64,000 nucleotides of DNA, from assembly GCA_965649765.1 (NCBI GenBank), contig OZ287750.1, forward strand, positions 52,514,001-52,578,000. Direction: 5' to 3'. Both the position numbers and the translations under genes were made by a program. The notes beneath the pieces are model-generated. The model ran no database searches. It was not told the origin of the DNA and was given only the letters and a program-made list of their open reading frames with translations. The number at the start of each line of letters is the position of its first letter. Position 1 is the stretch's first letter. This document shows, in pieces, positions 12,183-46,204 of the stretch. Source of the stretch: Bispira polyomma. Its lineage: Eukaryota.

Positions 12183-12290
12183 GCCCACACTATTCTATCT
12201 GAGTTATGCATGGGTGGAATGGTGCTGGAAACGAGCATGACCGAGATTATAACCCGTTTGGAGGAGCAGAATAAACTGGAGAAGTCTGAG
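12183..12290 (+). CDS. AP3S1: AP3S exon 5a, putative mutually exclusive (AHTILSELCMGGMVLETSMTEIITRLEEQNKLEKSE)
   Basis: tttcag|GCC...GAG|gtattg, 108 nt, phase 0/0, MGGMVLET motif. Confidence 0.9.
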
Positions 12291-12357: not shown

Positions 12358-12465
12358 GTCCATTTTATCCTGTCAGAGCTCTGTATGGGCGGCATGGTGC
12401 TTGAGACAAATATGAATGAAATTCTCGCTCGCACTGAGGAACAGTCTAAGTTAGAAAAACATGAG
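12358..12465 (+). CDS. AP3S1: AP3S exon 5b, putative mutually exclusive (VHFILSELCMGGMVLETNMNEILARTEEQSKLEKHE)
   Basis: ttgcag|GTC...GAG|gtatga, 108 nt, phase 0/0. Paralog of 5a; not present as an ORF in the supplied track. Confidence 0.92.
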
Positions 12466-28598: not shown

Positions 28599-28782
28599 TC
28601 AGCAGCCACAGCCAGCCTTCTCCTCATCCTCCTTAGGCTTTGTGACTTTGGTAGCACCGTGTTTGGTGAACTGAGCCTTGTCCACAGACTCCTCCATCCT
28701 CAGCATCACCTGGTTCAGCAGGCACTCAATGGCCTTGTTCACGTTCTGACCCGTCGCAGCACTCGTCTCAAAGTATGGCAAC
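28599..28782 (-). CDS. Rab27: Rab27 last coding exon (LPYFETSAATGQNV...EKAGCGC*)
   Basis: cacag|G TTG CCA...TGA. ETSA (G5) motif and a C-terminal CxC geranylgeranylation motif. Confidence 0.95.
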
Positions 28783-31580: not shown

Positions 31581-33606
31581 TATAACAATATTGTGTTATT
31601 TGTGTGTGTAAATACATAGAACAGAGGACAAGAATGTGTCACAGTGTCGAGTCCTAATATCAGAATTTTGTTCCCAATTGTTGACTTGTTATCTCAATAA
31701 ATCCAGATATTAATTAAGCCAAAGTCACATTTTATGTGTTTATGACATCACCTCCAACCCCGCACACACACCCCCCCCCTCCAAGCTTGAAGCACGGGTA
31801 GCATCTAGTTGATTTTCCTTATTAATAATTCAGTTAAAACCCCTTTAAATTAAACCATGTTGTACCAGGACAAATATCTTTACTAAAAGCAAATTTTGAC
31901 AGAAAAGGCTTTTGTGGAATTATGGATTTTCCACCATATAAAAAGCAACATCGACTAAAGTGTACATCATGTATATCATTTTGTATGATTTATTTTTTTA
32001 AATATGTTTTTATACTTGATGGAAAACATGAATAGAACTCAGTGTTAAATTTGTGATATATTACCTTTGTGTATTTCCGAAATAACAGATTTTTTAAAAT
32101 TTTATTGAAAAAGTAAATCATACAAAATAATGCTGATCTCTTTGTTTATCTGGTGGTGTGCAATATGGTAGTATAGATTTCCTCTTTATATGTGTAATGT
32201 ATCACGTTTGTGGAAATATTCATATTTTCTTACAATTTAAGCTTGTGATATGTAATCGTTTTACTGATATATTGTTAAAACAAATCTAAAAACTCATAAA
32301 GTAAAATTGAACTTTATATAACTTTATATAATTCTCCCTTTATCTTTTATAATCATCATACAGTAAAACTTGTGTTTAAAAATTCATTGAGGCCTTCATA
32401 ACAGAAGTAGTATAGGTTCAAGACAGTTTTTCTTTCATAAGATGGTTTAGCGGTGATCGTATTTTGTGTTTACGTTACTAACCCCTAAACAGAGTTCCAC
32501 TTAAAAGAGAGGTTTCCCTGTAATTCGTATATACCATGTTATTCATGATCAACTACTGCAAATTCTACAACATCAGTGACATACAGTAGCACTTATAAAG
32601 GAAAGCTTTTATTTCTACTTCCTCTACATCCAATTGATGCAACAAGTAAAGGACAATGGCCTTTTGTTAAAAGGTAGAACCTTTTTAGGCCAGTTCTTTG
32701 TGTGACAGCAATTCCTTCACTTCCACAAGTTATATCAAGGGGCGGAAAGCTCGAGACTTTCAAAACGTAAAGTCATTTTTAAATTTCTTTGTATATAGTA
32801 GGGATTTTTTTAATTTTCAACTAATAACTATGGGTCTTAATCCACTGTAGTTGCGTTTTGAAGTCAAATTAACATCTATTTTTTTTCATTTGTCCAATCA
32901 AAGACATCAAGATTGATAATCTAAACCTGAGTTTTAGTTATAGAGATGACAGAACTTCTCCTTATATTAGCTATGTCTTATATCTGAGATCTTTCCACTT
33001 CTCTACTGATGTCAGGTTTTCTCAAGTACATAAATTTCCTTAAGCCCCTCATAATGTAAGTTCCGAAAAAGCAATTTTTTTTCAAGATATGATTGCTAAC
33101 ACCCAAGACATCCATGTTAGGGTGAATTAGAGAGTGTGGTTTTTTGGAAGAAGAAACCTGGATACTAATAAGGTTTGATAAATAATACTGTAATTCCCAG
33201 AATAGGTCTGGATACAAGTAAAGGTTTCCCTATTATACAGCAACTTCCAGACTCATCTGGCTACTACCAGCGATTCTACCCCTAAATACTACAATTCCCA
33301 GGTTTTATACAATACCAAGCTTTTACAGGTAAATAATGCAATTCCAGATTCACAGGTAAATAATACAATTCCAGATTAGGTTTTGATCAATTCTAAGCTT
33401 CTAGCCCTAACATCTTGCCCATATTTGTCTGCCATCTTTTCAGATCTCACCCAATTTGCCTGTCATCTCTTTAGATCCCTCCTCAGAGATGATTCTCTGG
33501 TAATTCCTAGACCAGGTTTTGTACAATTATAATGTTCAACACCTAAATACTACAATTCCCAGACTAGGCTTTATACAATTGTAAGTTTCTGCCTCTAACA
33601 TCAGAT

Positions 33607-33702
33607 CTTACCCATATTTGTCTGCCATCTCTTTGGCCCTTACCCATATTTTTCTGGCATCTCTTTCGACCTTACCCATATTTGTCTGCCATCTCTTTGG
33701 CC
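33607..33702 (-). repeat. 3 x 32-bp tandem duplication of the Rab27 exon 4 donor junction
   Basis: cttacccatatttgtctgccatctctttggcc-like units at 33607, 33639 and 33671. Confidence 0.9.
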
Positions 33703-33903
33703 CTCTCCTCGGTGATGACTCTCTGCTCCTCTAGATCCACCTTGTTCCCACACAGTACAATGTCTGGGTTCTCGCAGTAGGCGTGTGTTTGTAGCTGGGT
33801 CAGCCAGTTGCGGATGTTGAGAAAGGACTGCTCATTGGCCAAGTCAAATAGTAACACGAAACCCATGGCATCTCTAAAGAATGCTGTGGTTAGACTTCTG
33901 AAC
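33676..33903 (-). CDS. Rab27: Rab27 exon 4 ([20 protein letters not shown]...[26 protein letters not shown])
   Basis: ctttag|G...GG|gtaag, 228 nt. [13 protein letters not shown] and [15 protein letters not shown] are Rab27 signatures. Confidence 0.96.
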
Positions 33904-34986: not shown

Positions 34987-35072
34987 CTCTCTTGTCCTGC
35001 CGTGTCCCAAAGCTGTAAGAACACACGCTGACTGCGACCCGTGCTGCCATCTGTGCTCGGTAACCGATGTGT
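34987..35072 (-). CDS. Rab27: Rab27 exon 3 ([29 protein letters not shown])
   Basis: tttcag|ACA...AG|gtgggg, 86 nt. Contains the Rab27-specific insert and WDTAGQE (G3). Confidence 0.95.
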
Positions 35073-39192: not shown

Positions 39193-39509
39193 TGCAAACA
39201 TTAGCAGCTAAAAGCTACAGATTCTTAACCTATAAACAAAAATGACCATACTGATTTTACGGAAACTTGTTTCATTATTTAATAATCATATATATTAATG
39301 TAGATCTTATCTTATTCATGTAACAGATTAACTCTGTTAAATTATTAACTGAATACTGAACAAAACCTGCACTGTCCATGAGTTACACATGTTTTGAATA
39401 CAGGCTAAAGACACAAAAAAAAGTAGGAAAATAGGTAAAAGTAGTATGGTGTAAGGATATATTTGATACAAAACATCAATACAGCAAATTTAAAGAAGCT
39501 TTCTATTAC

Positions 39510-39616
39510 AATGATCTTTTCCCTGAAGTCTATTCCAATGGTTGGGATATATTGTCCATAATAGAAACTATCGGTAAACTGATGTAAAAATGTTGTCTTG
39601 CCAACTGAACTGTCAC
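39510..39616 (-). CDS. Rab27: Rab27 exon 2b, divergent duplicate P-loop/switch I (GDSSVGKTTFLHQFTDSFYYGQYIPTIGIDFREKII)
   Basis: ttccag|GT...ATT|gtaata, 107 nt, phase 1/0, no indels or stops. GxxxxGKT and TIGIDF are intact. Confidence 0.85.
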
Positions 39617-40336
39617 CTGGAAGTAAAGTTACAGTAACAGAAAATATAAGCAATATACTATACAATAGTTTACTAATTTCTGGTTTTGAAAATGACTGAC
39701 TTATTAATAAGATATTGGTACATGTACATGCTTATGAAATATTTGACAGAAACATACAGATAACAGAAACTGGTATTCTTATTACAGATAGCATTATCTT
39801 CATTAATTTCTATACAATGTCAAATGAAGCTGTTCAAATAGACAATATCTTTGTAACAGGTCAGTCATTTTATCATTGGCTATCTATGTTCAGTCACAAA
39901 TATATATAAACACCGCAATATTTGAGCAAGGGTCTTAGGAAAATACCACTAAGTTTTTGACGAACAATGAGAATAAAAAATGTAGACATTATCTCTAACT
40001 GGAAAAAAATATGTACACAATTTAACACAAGTAGAATTCTATTATCCTAATAGTAAAATTGAGAAAAGACATAAATTTCTTCCAGTGCACATAACTATCA
40101 TTGGTGACATCCTTTCCATATACAGCCCCAACACTACCATTTATACTAGCAGCCATATCAGACAATGGGGCACTGTAACATAATTAAGTTGACTTTTGTC
40201 ATATACAAAAATGTAACCCCTTTCTAAAATATTGACAGTGTGGGTATATATATTTGTCTCTGGTACATAGCCATACCAAGTTGTCAACTTGGAAGTTATT
40301 CTATTTGCACGACATACAGGCTCTATTAAAACTTAC

Positions 40337-40443
40337 TATCCGCTTCTCTCTGAAGTCTATTCCTACAGTGGAGATGAATTTGTTGTTAAATGTGCTGTCT
40401 GTATATTGATACAAAAACGAGGTCTTGCCCACTCCACTGTCTC
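40337..40443 (-). CDS. Rab27: Rab27 exon 2a, canonical P-loop/switch I ([36 protein letters not shown])
   Basis: tttcag|GA...ATA|gtaagt, 107 nt, phase 1/0. Confidence 0.95.
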
Positions 40444-40747
40444 CTGAAATCCACACAAATACAAGGGCAACCGGTACAGTATATGTATATACAGTAGAAC
40501 TTCTATTATCCAAACTTCTGTTTTCCCGATAATTCGATTTAATGAACTTGTTTTCGTATTATTTTGTACTGTATGGCCTATTCAATTTTATAAACCTTCA
40601 GTTGTCTAAACAAAATGTTTGTTTCTGAACATTTTTGGATAATGGAGGTTTTTTAATGCATATCACTTAAGTTCTAGACATAGTGACATATTATTAAATA
40701 AAATAAATATAATGTCATGGCATTATAAGTTTATATTTTATACACAG

Positions 40748-42055
40748 TAAGGCACGGAATCGGCCTGTTTTTTCCAGGTCGATTAATCGCTTCATTTGCC
40801 GGGTTATGATCGATTTATAATCGATTATTTACACAATTATATTGTTTAAAATATTAAGTTTATCCTGCCATCCCAGGCTGAATATATTGTGATCCGTAAA
40901 AAATTTGCTTAAATTCAAACGTTTCACATTTAGTATCTACCGCTAAACTATTTGACTTCAGGTAAACAAATGCAAAAGTGATAAAAATTGCTTTTTTTGA
41001 CATAAAAACCATATAAAACTAGACCTAGCACATCAGAGAACCGATGCATATTTGTATCCACCAGAAAGACAAAGCACCCTGGGTAGTAAGCACCTTAGGT
41101 AGCAAGCACCCTTGCTAGCACCTAAGCTAGGAGCCTATGATTTCCTATAGGGCATTTATGCTAAAGCCTCAAATCGCACAAGTAAGTTTCACATTGCAAA
41201 CAAGAAGTGTAAGATAGGCACTTTAAAGTTTGGCCTACCTGTTTGACCTTGCACGAGGGATCCAAGGTCAAATCTGACCACAACAAAAGATTAGCAGCCC
41301 ATGGTTTACTATAGGTTGGTTTCACATCCCAAACCTGTACGACCAATAAAAAGGGAGATGTAGGGACTTTTATGTTGATTAAGACTGACCTTGAACGAGA
41401 GCCAAAGGTCAAATCGGACCACATGAAAAGATTACCAGCCCATGATTTCCTATAGGTTTGTTTTAGATCCCAAACCTCTAGCACCCATATTAAGCGAGAT
41501 ATAGGCACTAGGGAAAATTGGGCCAAAATCGGTCACTTGGGGTACTTTGGCACTTTGTTGATGACCTTGAATGAGGAGATTCAAGGTCAAATGTCTGCAT
41601 GCTTATAAAGGACTAAACATCCGTTAAACATATCACCCGTAAAGAGATTTAACCTTCTACAGCTGAGAAACAGACACAGTTAAAAGCCTGATTATTATCA
41701 AAGAAACGCCCGTGGCGGCCATCTTGCTTGTCAAAATGAGGCCAAAATAACTCCCAGGCAATCTTTTGTAATAAAGAACATATCCTGTAAATTTGAGTAG
41801 CCTAGGTGTAAAAGTTTTGCCAGGAGAGTGGTAACGGTAAAATCTCCACACACTGATGTGGCATCGGCATAATGATGACTAATCCATAGTATCCACCAGA
41901 GTTTTCCAGTGGATAAAACGTCAAAATATCTCATTAGTTGAAGTTAGGAAAAGTATTTGGTGAAAAATTGATTACCTAAAATTAGGACTGATTAACAACG
42001 ATCTTGGAGTATCATCGACAATTAATCGACTGGTCGTCTAATTGTTTAACCACTA
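40748..42055. mobile_element. hAT-like element with nested HINE
   Basis: Exact 8-bp TSD atacacag at 40740-40747 and 42056-42063. TA..TA termini and cgattaatcg subterminal motifs. Confidence 0.7.
41017..41918 (-). mobile_element. Helentron-associated (HINE-like) element
   Basis: aactag end with hairpin, subterminal tatccacc / gtggata inverted repeat, internal ~140-bp repeats. Confidence 0.65.
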
Positions 42056-44223
42056 ATACACAGGGAGAACACCAATACATCACTGGTATGTAGTCTGAAG
42101 ACTAACCTTTTAATCTCACAGATCATAGAGCAGGGATCTTATATCAAGATTGAAGTATTAGTGTATTTTGTTTAAATCTTGTTTCAAAAATATGAATTAC
42201 ATCAAATTTGAACAATGAAGTTAAACAATATTATGCATATATGCTATACTTGCATTGTGTTTGGTTATCTTCCATTTAATGCAGCTTTACAAAATACTTG
42301 ACAAAGGTCTCGCAGTTGTATTTGAAGATTTATTTATCTCTAGCCTTATATGAATGAGTTAATAAGTGTAGTTACCACTAAGAACTCAAAATGACTCTGA
42401 AGTCTGAATAATCTTTTTGAATGACGTCAGTTTTTGTGTTTGACTGGCTGCCACTGACAGTAACATGATCTAGCTATCTCATTCTATGATCCCCAACAAT
42501 CTGTCCAAGGGTATCTTAACTAGACTATTGCATTAGGTTGATAGTGATGGAGAATTGGAGATCAGGTCCCAAAATATGGAGTCCCCAGGACTCAGCCATT
42601 GCTAAAGTATTAAGTCCAAAAAGTTTTTGTTAAAAATTTTGACAGAGACTTAAATTTGAACATATACATGTTTTATACTTCAAGCAGTTAACATGCTTTA
42701 TTTTACTTTCGCTTAAAAATACTAGAGCACACATTTGTGACAATATACTTGGAAGCCTTACTATCACGATCTGTGAGTTTGCTATAAGTAAAGTATTCAG
42801 GAGACAATAAGATGACAGAATGATGCTAATATTCTTTGAGAGGAGAGACTCAGGGTACAGTGAGTCTTCTGAGGCCTCACAAAATATTTATACAATGATA
42901 AATTGTTGATACAGAAAAAAAAACTATATATCACACCGAGGGCGTATTAAAAACATAGAAATAGTGATGGAAAAATAACATTTATTCAGATATGAAAAAG
43001 TAATGAGTAACGAGTATCCTATATCAGTACTATATATAAGCAAAATAATTAAGGAAAAGAGTAATTTACAATCCTTTACAAAGTCAACCTATTTAAACGA
43101 CACTATTTTTTGCCCTTTACTGCAGTTATAAATATTTTAGAAGACTTTCACCCAAAAGTGCCTACTCTTCTTAAATTCCTTGTGAGGATTACTGTTCTTA
43201 ACTGGGTTTAGTATTGGGGGATGTCAACAGTGGGCTAAGTATTGAGGGCTGTAAAAAATGAACTTTCATAGATGGTTTGACAATCACCTAAACTTGACTT
43301 TGCAGAATTTAACTTCTAAGACAATTTAAACAAACATGTCACATAAATAATTGGAAGGAATTTTAATGATCCGATATGGCAATAGTCAAAAGAAGCAAAC
43401 AGTCTTAAGTATATAATATTACAGGGAAGTAGCCAGGATTTTTCATTTAGTACTCCCCATTGAACCAAAATTTTCATTCTGTCTGTCATAAATTTTTTTA
43501 TTATTTTATTTCGTTAGTACTAACATAGATTTATGTTATTAAATTAAAAAAAGAAAAATTATTATTTTTTTTTTAAATTTCTGTTCTTTAAAAAAACATT
43601 CCTGTCATTGGCATTAATGGTGGCTACGCCCCTGCATTTACACTAACCAAATGGAAACTCTGAAGACCAAACACTAGCACTTTTAGAAAAAAGGCATATA
43701 GCAAAAATATATATATATGCTATGGATCACTGAAATTATGGCCTTTTCTGGACTTGTTTGGAGCTTTACTATAAAGTCCTTATAAAGATGGTAAATACCA
43801 TGGCTCAACAGAAAAGCTACAAAAAAGCAAGTTATGACATAAACATCGCCCAAAATGCTGCAAAACAGGTCATATCATCTATACTAGCACTTCTGTAAAA
43901 CCATGTCTTCCAAAGTAGAAAACTTAGATAAAAGAATCAAAGAAAATGAAAACTTTACTATTGAAGGATTTTCTTATTAATTTCTTCAGCAATGTCAAAT
44001 TAACAGTCTAAATTTATATAATTTAGAAGTTCTTCAAAATATATGCAAAACAACCGCAAAACATACTGAACAATAAAAATGTACACATAAACGTATCTTC
44101 AAATTTTTAACTAACAGAATTAATCACTACCGTCTTGAAGTGCCACCAAATAATCAATGAACAAATAGACGGTAGATGCAAAACCCTGTAAAATTGCAAG
44201 AGGCCTTATTTGTTATTACTCAC

Positions 44224-44302
44224 CGAGTGCTAGGAATTTGATGAGGTAGTCGTAATCTGCTCCAGTCGTGGTCCCATTGGCTGTGACAGAGGAGTCACCC
44301 AT
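44224..44302 (-). CDS. Rab27: Rab27 first coding exon (MGDSSVTANGTTTGADYDYLIKFLAL-G)
   Basis: ctgtag|AGTTGGAG ATG ... CTC G|gtgagt. DYDYLIKFLALG is the Rab27 N-terminal signature. The exon begins at 44310, so a further 5'UTR exon lies upstream. Confidence 0.94.
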
Positions 44303-46204
44303 CTCCAACTCTACAGTCATTAAAACACACAGATACTAGTTAGTTTAACGATTTATTAGGTGCTCACCTTTCTCTTTCAACTTATAGAAGCAAGCTGAAG
44401 ACCTATATCTCTATCACGAAGCTGATCCCACTTGACAAAGTCTCACCATCACTGACCCCACTCTCTGTTAATGACACTTTTTCTGTCCACCACAATATGA
44501 TTACTGAACAATGTTTTTGGATGTTGCGACTTATAATCCGCTAGTAATGAGATTTGGCGTGATTATGGAATTGATTAGATTAGATTTAACTTACTGTTTT
44601 ACTAATTAATAGTTAAATGTTCTTGTGTTATATAATTTCTGTTCATATGGTTTTGTTCCTTTCATTTTGTAACACTGTTATTATATACATGTTCCATTTT
44701 ATGTACCAAGAGTTAATGGCATATTATTGAAATAAATTTATTTTATTCAAATATGCCAGAAAGATACTTATTCAATATAGTAATATAAATATTCTACATG
44801 CTTCTTCTATATTTAAGCTTTGTATTATCCAGACAGTATCCTGCTGTCCCAAAGTAGTCGAATAATGATGGTTTTGTTACTATATTCAATATATGTCCGA
44901 CCTTAAAAAGCTACATACATTATTACACTCTAGTGCAGTAACAGATTAACTCAACTATCAACTCTAATTTCATAAGAAACACAACTACTAGTTAACATTT
45001 TAGTTATATACCAAAAATAACCATATTTATTTTCTAATTTCCCAACAACTAAATATTCAGTTGGAACTTGGATGCACTCCTTTCCCCTTTAATTTCTTTT
45101 TGCTATTTATAATAAAACGACTCTTCTACATTGAACCTTTCCAATATCCAAACAAAATCTTGCTGTCCCAAGGTTATTTAAGTTAGGTTTTTAATGTATT
45201 CAAAAGATGTAGGGCTTTTTGAATATATATGCACCCTAATTAGTCATACATTAAGTGATTTACTTCACTTATTAATCACTAAATTAAACAACCTTCGTTT
45301 GTAGTTTCAGTTGTAAAATATTTATTGTAACAAAATATATTTTCATAATTCCATCATTATTTTAGTCACAATGCATTACTTTGACACACAATGTAGATAA
45401 TATACAGTATATGTAGTCATATTTTTCCTCCTGCTTTCTATAAACTTGCTTTGTAGTTATATAGCAAGCTGTCACTGGCTGATAACTTTCAGCAACCTTT
45501 AGAGCTTTTTCCAATTTAAGTCTATTGTGCATATGTAAAGCTAATTCAATTACAGTATCACCATTTTTCATTTTAAAAGCAAGTACTGCCTGAAAACAAT
45601 CTCAACGTTGCATTTTAGACATTACACTAAAACATCATAATAATGATTTGTATGTGCATACATTTGTGCCGATACTCAATGCAATTTAAATCTACAGATA
45701 AATGTGTATGGTGATCATATATTCAGGGTATTTTATCAATAGTTGTCTTGTATTAGCACAAGTGTGAATCATGTGACAAAGTTACATATACCAGACCATA
45801 GCACAGGCACTTTATGAAGGGTAAAGAATAATAAAACTTAAAGCCTTATAATTCTTACTATAATAGCATACACTGTTTAATGTAGGGTTTAAATGCGCTT
45901 TAAAGAACATTGAAAAGATAATTAAGTTTTCTAAATGCTATTCCATTGACAAAACTATTTTTTGGAGGCGGTTTAAAAGTGTCCTAACAATTAGCAATAT
46001 TTATTTACCGGTTGCTTTTTGTCAATTTATCAGTATAACATTTACTTAAATAACATCAGTTTCCAAATATAAGCTCACTGATAACACATTTATGATTGCA
46101 TTAACCCTTTTGCGATAATGTCTGTTTACAACCAGGCGACACCCATTATTATCATTTAGCAACATCAAAATAAATGGCACAAGGCATCAGTGGTCTTTCT
46201 TTTA

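What the first reader, a model, noticed from the sequence alone, without database searches (positions are those of the whole stretch)
39510..40443. Rab27 has two interchangeable P-loop/switch-I exons: a splice-switched Rab with alternative effector surfaces
Seen: two 107-nt exons with identical phases (1/0) and canonical splice sites, 720 nt apart. They encode [36 protein letters not shown] (2a, canonical Rab27) and GDSSVGKTTFLHQFTDSFYYGQYIPTIGIDFREKII (2b). 23/36 residues are identical, 12 of those 23 use different codons, and there are no indels or stops, which points to an old duplicate under purifying selection rather than decay. Because 107 is not a multiple of 3, including both or neither shifts the frame, enforcing exclusivity. 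Established: this segment holds the P-loop and switch I, which bind effectors (Slp/Slac2/Munc13-4 for Rab27), and Rab6A/A' is the precedent for Rab isoforms made by mutually exclusive exons. Inference: 2b (Rab3-like SSVGK P-loop, Rab8/10-like TIGIDF, aromatic FYYGQY-IP switch I) gives a second GTPase with different effector, GEF or GAP specificity from one gene. I know of no description of this for Rab27.
Basis: partly seen in the sequence, partly recalled or inferred. Interest (0 to 1): 0.9.

Follow-up and report, generated by a model that had tools for sequence, protein, structure and literature searches.

The report
Duplicated switch-I exon in worm Rab27
A worm gene for the secretion switch Rab27 carries two intact versions of the exon for its nucleotide-binding loop and probably makes two protein versions; oysters have the same layout with RNA proof, so this is a known kind of splicing in a gene where I found no paper describing it, and the worm copy itself has no RNA proof.

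Summary
Observation confirmed. A Rab27 gene (minus strand, probably an annelid) has two 107-nt, phase 1/0 copies of the P-loop/switch-I exon, 720 nt apart. Either copy alone gives 227 aa; both or neither gives an early stop. Copy 2b is under purifying selection (synonymous sites saturated, pN 0.21; neutral decay P≤0.002).

No RNA run was available, and 2b's donor is weak, so its use here is unproven. 2b is absent in four other annelids and about 30 further genomic loci.

Oysters have the same arrangement (canonical copy first, divergent second), annotated as RefSeq isoform pairs in six species, with the divergent form spliced in mRNA contigs. The oyster copy is no closer to 2b than to 2a, so two independent duplications are likelier (shared origin not rejected, AU p=0.12). 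RAB37/Rab26, not Rab6A, is the closest precedent.

2b keeps all catalytic and RabF1 residues; changes cluster at positions 33-40. Both divergent copies lose Lys37, a modelled contact to the exchange factor MADD, so altered activation is as likely as effector swapping. The inter-exon intron folds into two long stems of unknown role. The scan had no earlier Rab note. New variant of a known kind; interest 0.5.

The parts
44224..44302 (-). Rab27 first coding exon (ATG to strand beta-1; ends in phase 1 inside the P-loop Gly codon). It has a splice acceptor at 44310, so a further upstream exon is expected.
40337..40443 (-). Exon 2a, canonical P-loop/alpha-1/switch I/RabF1 exon, 107 nt, phase 1/0, strong donor. 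Its peptide is identical to Capitella Rab27.
39617..40336 (-). 720-nt intron between the copies; single-copy in the genome; most strongly folding of 26 windows tested
39877..40273 (-). Predicted long stem A (arms 40273-40218 and 39932-39877; 46 bp, mean pair probability 0.93)
39689..39871 (-). Predicted long stem B (arms 39871-39843 and 39717-39689; about 29 bp, mean pair probability 0.98)
39510..39616 (-). Exon 2b, divergent duplicate, 107 nt, phase 1/0, good acceptor, weak donor, 13 amino-acid changes against 2a
34987..35072 (-). Exon 3 (Rab27 interswitch insert and switch II start)
33676..33903 (-). Exon 4
28599..28782 (-). Last coding exon with C-terminal CXC prenylation motif and stop

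Best explanation
2a and 2b are homologous mutually exclusive cassette exons of one Rab27 gene, made by a lineage-restricted tandem exon duplication. Shown: anatomy, frames, selection on 2b, and the same splicing in oysters. Inferred: 2a is the default exon, and 2b (weak donor) is included in some tissue or stage. Inferred: transcripts with both or neither copy are removed by NMD, possibly helped by intron stems that bring the 2a donor near the 2b branch point. Inferred: the 2b protein is still a working GTPase (P-loop Lys/Thr, switch-I Thr and RabF1 kept) with the same switch II, CDRs and membrane tail. Its rewired first half of switch I (positions 33-40, including K37Q, F38Y, S40P) most likely changes exchange-factor coupling and nucleotide cycling, and may tune effector choice. 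One gene would thus supply two Rab27 variants, as vertebrates do with RAB27A and RAB27B.
For: Same length, phase and AG/GT. Either exon alone gives an open 227-aa frame. Synonymous sites saturated (pS 0.85) against pN 0.21; bootstrap upper bound for omega 0.23 for the pair and 0.47 if all amino-acid change is put on 2b. Neutral-decay simulation reaches the observed pattern in at most 0.2% of runs, against 34-79% at omega 0.15-0.3 for plausible ages. Similarity stops at the exon edges. 2b passes the Pfam Ras cut-off, 30 bits against 21.6. Six oyster species have RefSeq isoform pairs differing only in this segment. The Saccostrea locus has exon 1, canonical copy, divergent copy, exon 3. M. gigas mRNA contigs join exon 1, the divergent copy and exon 3 directly; that isoform is on 24 contigs. 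Position 37 is K or R in 99% of 204 Rab27 records but Q in 2b and S in the oyster copy; Lys37 of Rab27B contacts MADD Asp653 in an AlphaFold model (PMC12495445). I44 and K22, needed for melanophilin binding (PMC7758216), are kept.
Against: No RNA run holds the region; the three runs laid are genomic DNA. The 2b donor has neither -1G nor +5G, with 4/11 U1 matches. No 2b-like exon in Capitella, a second capitellid-like contig, Lamellibrachia, Paralvinella, Owenia or about 30 multi-exon metagenome loci. No 2b-type sequence among about 250 full-length proteins retrieved, including the mRNA-derived protein closest to this host (P0286). Selection tests show the past, not present use. The functional consequences rest on vertebrate structures and one predicted model.
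Confidence: 0.72

Rival explanations
1. 2b was a working alternative exon for most of its history but has recently fallen silent; the donor has decayed and the exon has not yet collected stops.
For: Weakest donor of the gene. No transcript or protein evidence anywhere. Long 2b branch in the tree. Contig branching suggests a heterozygous site at about 39512, the first base of the last 2b codon (the letter is not shown).
Against: Acceptor is as good as any in the gene. No stop or indel. Both oyster copies also lack +5G and are used, although they keep -1G. Regulated exons often have weak sites (own knowledge).
Confidence: 0.16
2. 2b is used mainly as a poison exon: joined after 2a it shifts the frame and sends the mRNA to NMD, dosing Rab27.
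For: The 2a+2b product stops at codon 90, 334 nt before the last junction. In human frame-shifting clusters, joining reads were found in 22% (PMC5740500).
Against: A poison exon needs no conserved peptide, yet 2b shows strong amino-acid constraint. The oyster copy is translated in frame.
Confidence: 0.06
3. 2b goes with its own alternative first exon and promoter, like the alternative N-termini of RAB37, or belongs to a separate gene.
For: RAB37 isoforms differ in their N-terminal segments (PMC9714508; proteins). Coral contigs encode Rab27-like P-loop segments resembling 2b with different N-termini.
Against: A motif scan found no exon encoding strand beta-1 with a phase-1 donor between exon 1 and 2b; the one ATG frame in the inter-exon intron has no usable donor. 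There is only one set of downstream exons. Oyster isoforms share exon 1. The coral contigs are short and may be paralogous genes.
Confidence: 0.04
4. 2b is a neutral pseudo-exon or an assembly artefact.
For: Absent from all annelid relatives examined.
Against: Neutral simulation P at most 0.002, without even counting indels and splice sites. Raw-data contigs reproduce the stretch exactly.
Confidence: 0.02

Closest known systems
Oyster Rab27 isoform pairs in RefSeq (e.g. C. virginica XP_022306769/XP_022306772, M. gigas XP_034318235/6, O. edulis XP_056003056/7, S. echinata XP_061190110/1)
   Same: Same gene, same 107-nt phase 1/0 exon, same order (canonical then divergent), similar divergence (12-13 residues). 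Both divergent copies change positions 19, 24, 27, 33, 35, 36, 37.
   Different: The oyster copy is 16-19/35 identical to 2b but 21-23/35 to 2a, and 53/107 nt to 2b, the lowest pair in the matrix; only Y27H is the same change. The overlap of changed positions is not beyond chance (p 0.07, or 0.5 without invariant sites). The oyster copy is RNA-supported and conserved across Ostreidae; 2b is neither. Inter-exon intron 2.7 kb, without equally clean stems.
RAB37/Rab26 tandem-duplicated exon substitution (PMC8373072)
   Same: Secretory Rab with two homologous exons for the P-loop and switch I; the differing residues form a surface patch. The pair is also present in this genome (G000:C6, L013 near 1468 and 5041).
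   Different: A different gene. Its exons include the end of beta-1 and are phase 0/0. It is ancient (human to Drosophila) and goes with alternative N-termini in humans. The Rab27 pair is a frame-shifting internal cassette and lineage-restricted.
Rab6A/Rab6A' (Echard et al. 2000, cited in PMC2174079)
   Same: Two Rab isoforms from one gene by alternative splicing, with a selective effector (Rabkinesin-6 binds only Rab6A).
   Different: Only three residues differ, near switch II rather than in P-loop/switch I (own knowledge); here 13 differ.
Homologous mutually exclusive exons in general (PMC5740500)
   Same: Tandem duplicate, equal length, not divisible by three, as in 60% of human clusters.
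   Different: Junction evidence is missing here. Linear donor-to-branch distance is far above 50 nt, so steric exclusion would need the intron stems.
Vertebrate RAB27A/RAB27B paralogues
   Same: Two Rab27 variants with distinct roles in secretion (PMC4773767).
   Different: Separate genes differing along the whole protein; here only one exon differs.

Membership tests
Rab27 subfamily | Best similarity to Rab27 over other Rabs | tested here: met
   2a's top 14 PDB matches are Rab27A/B (E 1e-14), Rab3 next (E 3e-9); exons 1, 3, 4, 5 match annotated Rab27 proteins.
Rab27 subfamily | Interswitch insert, G motifs and C-terminal CXC prenylation motif | tested here: met
   Exons 3-5.
Rab27 subfamily | Orthologous neighbourhood | tested here: met
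   An AP-sigma adaptor gene is next to Rab27 in the window and in Capitella, in different orientation.
Rab27 subfamily | Binds SHD effectors and is activated by MADD | not testable with these tools
   Needs biochemistry.
Active small GTPase (2b isoform) | P-loop GKT, switch-I Thr, aromatic G1 residue, RabF1 with F46 | tested here: met
   G21, K22, T23, T41, G43, I44, D45, F46 kept; F34 and F38 changed to Tyr; Pfam Ras 30 bits, over cut-off.
Homologous mutually exclusive exons | Adjacent homologous exons of equal length and phase with canonical splice sites | tested here: met
Homologous mutually exclusive exons | Each exon alone keeps the frame; both or neither does not | tested here: met
Homologous mutually exclusive exons | Junction reads for each exon, few joining reads | not testable with these tools
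   No RNA run of this organism was found; runs laid were DNA. Met only for the oyster counterpart.
Homologous mutually exclusive exons | Coding constraint on both copies | tested here: met
Homologous mutually exclusive exons | Second copy conserved in relatives | tested here: inconclusive
   Absent in four distant annelids; no close relative was available; the oyster copy is of uncertain orthology.
Orthologue of the oyster alternative exon | 2b and the oyster copy form one clade | tested here: inconclusive
   Best tree joins 2b with this genome's 2a (88/95, unstarred); the forced clade is 5.9 lnL worse, AU p 0.12.
RAB37/Rab26 duplicated exon pair | Same gene and same exon borders | tested here: not met
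   The Rab26/37 pair lies in another gene on contig C6 with phase 0/0 borders.

The most novel reading that the evidence does not exclude
The P-loop/switch-I exon of Rab27 was duplicated independently in an annelid lineage and in oysters, and both new copies converged on losing the switch-I Lys37 contact to the exchange factor MADD. Splicing would then set how a secretory Rab is switched on while keeping its effectors and membrane tail, and in this worm two long intron stems would enforce the choice sterically. With RAB37/Rab26 this would make the segment a recurrent splice-switched module of secretory Rabs.
Probability: 0.2. Interest if true: 0.72.

Novelty: new variant of a known kind. Interest (0 to 1): 0.5.

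Why it matters
Rab27 controls regulated secretion, and switch I is part of the surface that nearly all Rab partners bind (PMC5902227). A natural swap of this one segment on an otherwise identical protein is a clean test of what the first half of switch I decides: exchange factor, GAP or effector. The oyster pair makes that test possible now, in a species with abundant RNA data where the divergent form is on more mRNA contigs than the canonical one. Repeated duplication of the same exon in two phyla would point to a favoured route for diversifying secretory Rabs without gene duplication. The splicing principle itself is not new.

Tried and rejected
RNA evidence: the run search gave three runs of one study. 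Laid on 39380-44420 they proved to be genomic DNA.

Searches for a 2b orthologue found none: word search with the 2b region, HMMER against 50% representatives (best 68% identity), profile search and metagenome scans. sees only proteins of 59-189 aa, so that blank says little.

Coral proteins P0006 and P0016 resemble 2b, but lie on 1-2.6 kb contigs with fused exons 1+2 and no other Rab27 exon. They were left unassigned.

NCBI isoforms of Patella, Ptychodera, horseshoe crabs, Owenia, Lingula, Lineus, Babylonia and Octopus do not differ in exon 2. Their genomic loci were not checked, except Owenia.

An alternative first exon for 2b was looked for and not found. A third copy was excluded. A U12 mismatch was rejected because both donors are GT-AG U2 type. 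A docking-site/selector pairing could not be told from 211 chance inverted repeats.

Three look-ups of genomic contigs failed and one folding script timed out. No structure was predicted.

Exons were concatenated only inside a script to count stop positions. The profile held one window exon (2b) plus two database proteins.

Full report
Observation. They share 70 of 107 nt. 23 of 36 residues are the same and 12 of those use different codons; there is no indel or stop. No third copy exists in the window. The host gene is complete: exon 1 44302-44224, exon 3 35072-34987, exon 4 33903-33676, exon 5 28782-28599 with a CXC end. Either copy alone gives 227 aa. Both together stop after 90 aa and neither after 64 aa, 334 and 198 nt before the last junction. 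Contigs from genomic runs span 39380-40515 without a difference, so this is not an assembly artefact.

Gene and host. The best solved-structure matches of 2a are Rab27A/B, far ahead of Rab3. The 2a peptide is identical to that of Capitella teleta Rab27, and an AP-sigma adaptor gene neighbours Rab27 in both genomes. The host (1.035 Gb) is therefore probably an annelid; this is inference. Since 2a is the ancestral sequence, essentially all 13 amino-acid changes fall on the 2b branch.

Selection on 2b. Synonymous sites between the copies are saturated (pS 0.85) while pN is 0.21. The bootstrap upper bound for omega is 0.23 for the pair and 0.47 if all amino-acid change is put on 2b. In simulations where 2b decays neutrally, the observed pattern appears in at most 0.2% of runs at any age; with omega 0.15-0.3 it appears in 34-79% at plausible ages. 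Similarity ends at the exon borders, and 2b passes the Pfam Ras cut-off. This shows long-term coding constraint. It does not show that 2b is used today.

Evidence on use. No RNA run holds the region and the three runs offered are DNA, so no junction could be tested. The 2b acceptor is good. Its donor, ATT|gtaata, is the weakest in the gene, with 4 of 11 U1 matches against 6-7. In one run the contigs branch at about 39512 with half depth beyond it. I read this as a heterozygous site in the last 2b codon, but the letter was not shown.

Relatives. Capitella, Lamellibrachia, Paralvinella and Owenia each have one copy, as do about 30 multi-exon metagenome loci. No 2b-type sequence occurs among about 250 full-length proteins retrieved. 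No close relative of the host was available, so conservation of 2b is untested.

Oysters. Six oyster species have RefSeq isoform pairs of equal length that differ only in this 35-residue segment. The Saccostrea echinata locus shows exon 1, a canonical copy, a divergent copy and exon 3, both copies 107 nt with AG/GT, in the same order as here. Magallana gigas mRNA contigs join exon 1, the divergent copy and exon 3 directly; that isoform is on 24 contigs, the canonical one on 4. Between two oyster genera the divergent copy has pS 0.71 and pN 0.02. Mutually exclusive splicing of this exon is therefore real in Rab27, which raises the odds for the worm copy.

One origin or two. 2b is closest in DNA to this genome's own 2a (70/107, against 60-67 for other canonical copies) and furthest from the oyster copy (53/107). 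The tree joins 2b to 2a at 88/95; forcing 2b with the oyster copy costs 5.9 log-likelihood units, AU p 0.12. A single origin would also need several losses. Two independent duplications are likelier but not shown.

What 2b would change (human Rab27A numbering). It keeps G21, K22, T23, T41, G43, I44, D45 and F46. K22 and I44 are needed for melanophilin binding (PMC7758216), and specificity for melanophilin comes from CDR1 and switch II (PMC5902227), which both isoforms share. The changes cluster at 33-40, plus 19, 24, 27, 29, 42 and 50. Several are seen as the only version in other animals: S19 in Lamellibrachia, I42 and a non-Arg 50 in about 20 loci. Position 37 is Lys or Arg in 99% of 204 Rab27 records but Gln in 2b and Ser in the oyster copy. 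An AlphaFold model places Lys37 of Rab27B in a salt bridge with Asp653 of the exchange factor MADD (PMC12495445). I infer that altered activation and cycling is at least as likely as an effector swap. The overlap of changed positions between the two divergent copies is not beyond chance, so convergence is a lead only.

How exclusivity might work. Frame incompatibility with NMD follows from the lengths and is the commonest situation in human clusters (PMC5740500); it filters products and does not direct the spliceosome. The inter-exon intron folds far better than its shuffles (z -4.3; antisense -3.0) and shows the largest excess among 26 windows of the region. Two adjacent stems of about 46 and 29 bp have pair probabilities 0.93 and 0.98, and the sequence is single-copy. 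Folded, about 140 nt remain between the 2a donor and the 2b acceptor. This could aid steric exclusion or be the remains of old inverted-repeat elements. The stems work on either strand and have almost no G-U pairs, and no relative is available to test covariation.

Comparison with what is known. The closest published case is RAB37, whose duplicated exon is shared between humans and Drosophila and forms a variable surface patch (PMC8373072). It covers nearly the same segment and is present in this genome's Rab26/37 gene, with different exon borders. Rab6A/A' differ in three residues only (PMC2174079). Three paper searches found no description for Rab27; the library lacks many subscription papers. 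The scan's index held no earlier Rab note.

Limits. All functional statements are inference from vertebrate structures.

Verdict. A real, selected duplicate exon, probably a mutually exclusive cassette (0.72), with recent silencing as the main rival (0.16). It is a new variant of a known kind: new for annelid Rab27, present but apparently unremarked in oyster annotations. Interest 0.5.

Noticed in passing
window 12183-12290 and 12358-12465, + strand: Two homologous 108-nt exons of the AP-3 sigma gene, both AG/GT and in frame, separated by only 67 nt. A second duplicated-exon pair next door, already noted as s1-627056.
   Followed up: partly
L013 near 1468 and 5041 (G000:C6, about 71.05 Mb): This genome's Rab26/37 gene has the two alternative P-loop/switch-I exons known from vertebrate RAB37, phase 0/0, 3.6 kb apart.
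   Followed up: partly
L011 4694-8448 (G000:C2, about 57.01 Mb): A divergent Rab27-like paralogue with the same exon borders around exon 2; 45-64% identity in exons 2, 4 and 5.
   Followed up: no
L057 2266 and 5078 (Saccostrea echinata); proteins P0384-P0407: Oyster Rab27 has a conserved, expressed mutually exclusive pair of this exon; the divergent form is on more mRNA contigs than the canonical one.
   Followed up: yes
L015-L018 (coral contigs): Rab27-like P-loop segments with a Pro before the switch-I Thr and unusual N-termini, on short contigs; paralogue or alternative first exon is unknown.
   Followed up: partly
L023 19100-20830 (Owenia Rab27 intron 3): About 38 tandem 45-nt repeats, each containing the end of exon 3.
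   Followed up: no
window about 39512: Contig branch with half depth in run X3, suggesting a heterozygous site in the last codon of 2b; the letter is not shown.
   Followed up: partly
window 44310 and upstream: The first coding exon has a splice acceptor 8 nt before the ATG; relatives have a short N-terminal extension from an upstream exon. The upstream exon was not located.
   Followed up: no
window 40900-41950: Very high-copy repeat in intron 1; read depth about 20,000 times the single-copy level.
   Followed up: no
G000:C6:78272639 and 78284438 (L007, L008): Two copies of a Rab-like gene segment with identical exon peptide, 12 kb apart; recent tandem duplication or assembly duplicate.
   Followed up: no
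window 33600-33700: The end of exon 4 and its donor are repeated about three times in the following intron, at about 30-nt spacing.
   Followed up: no
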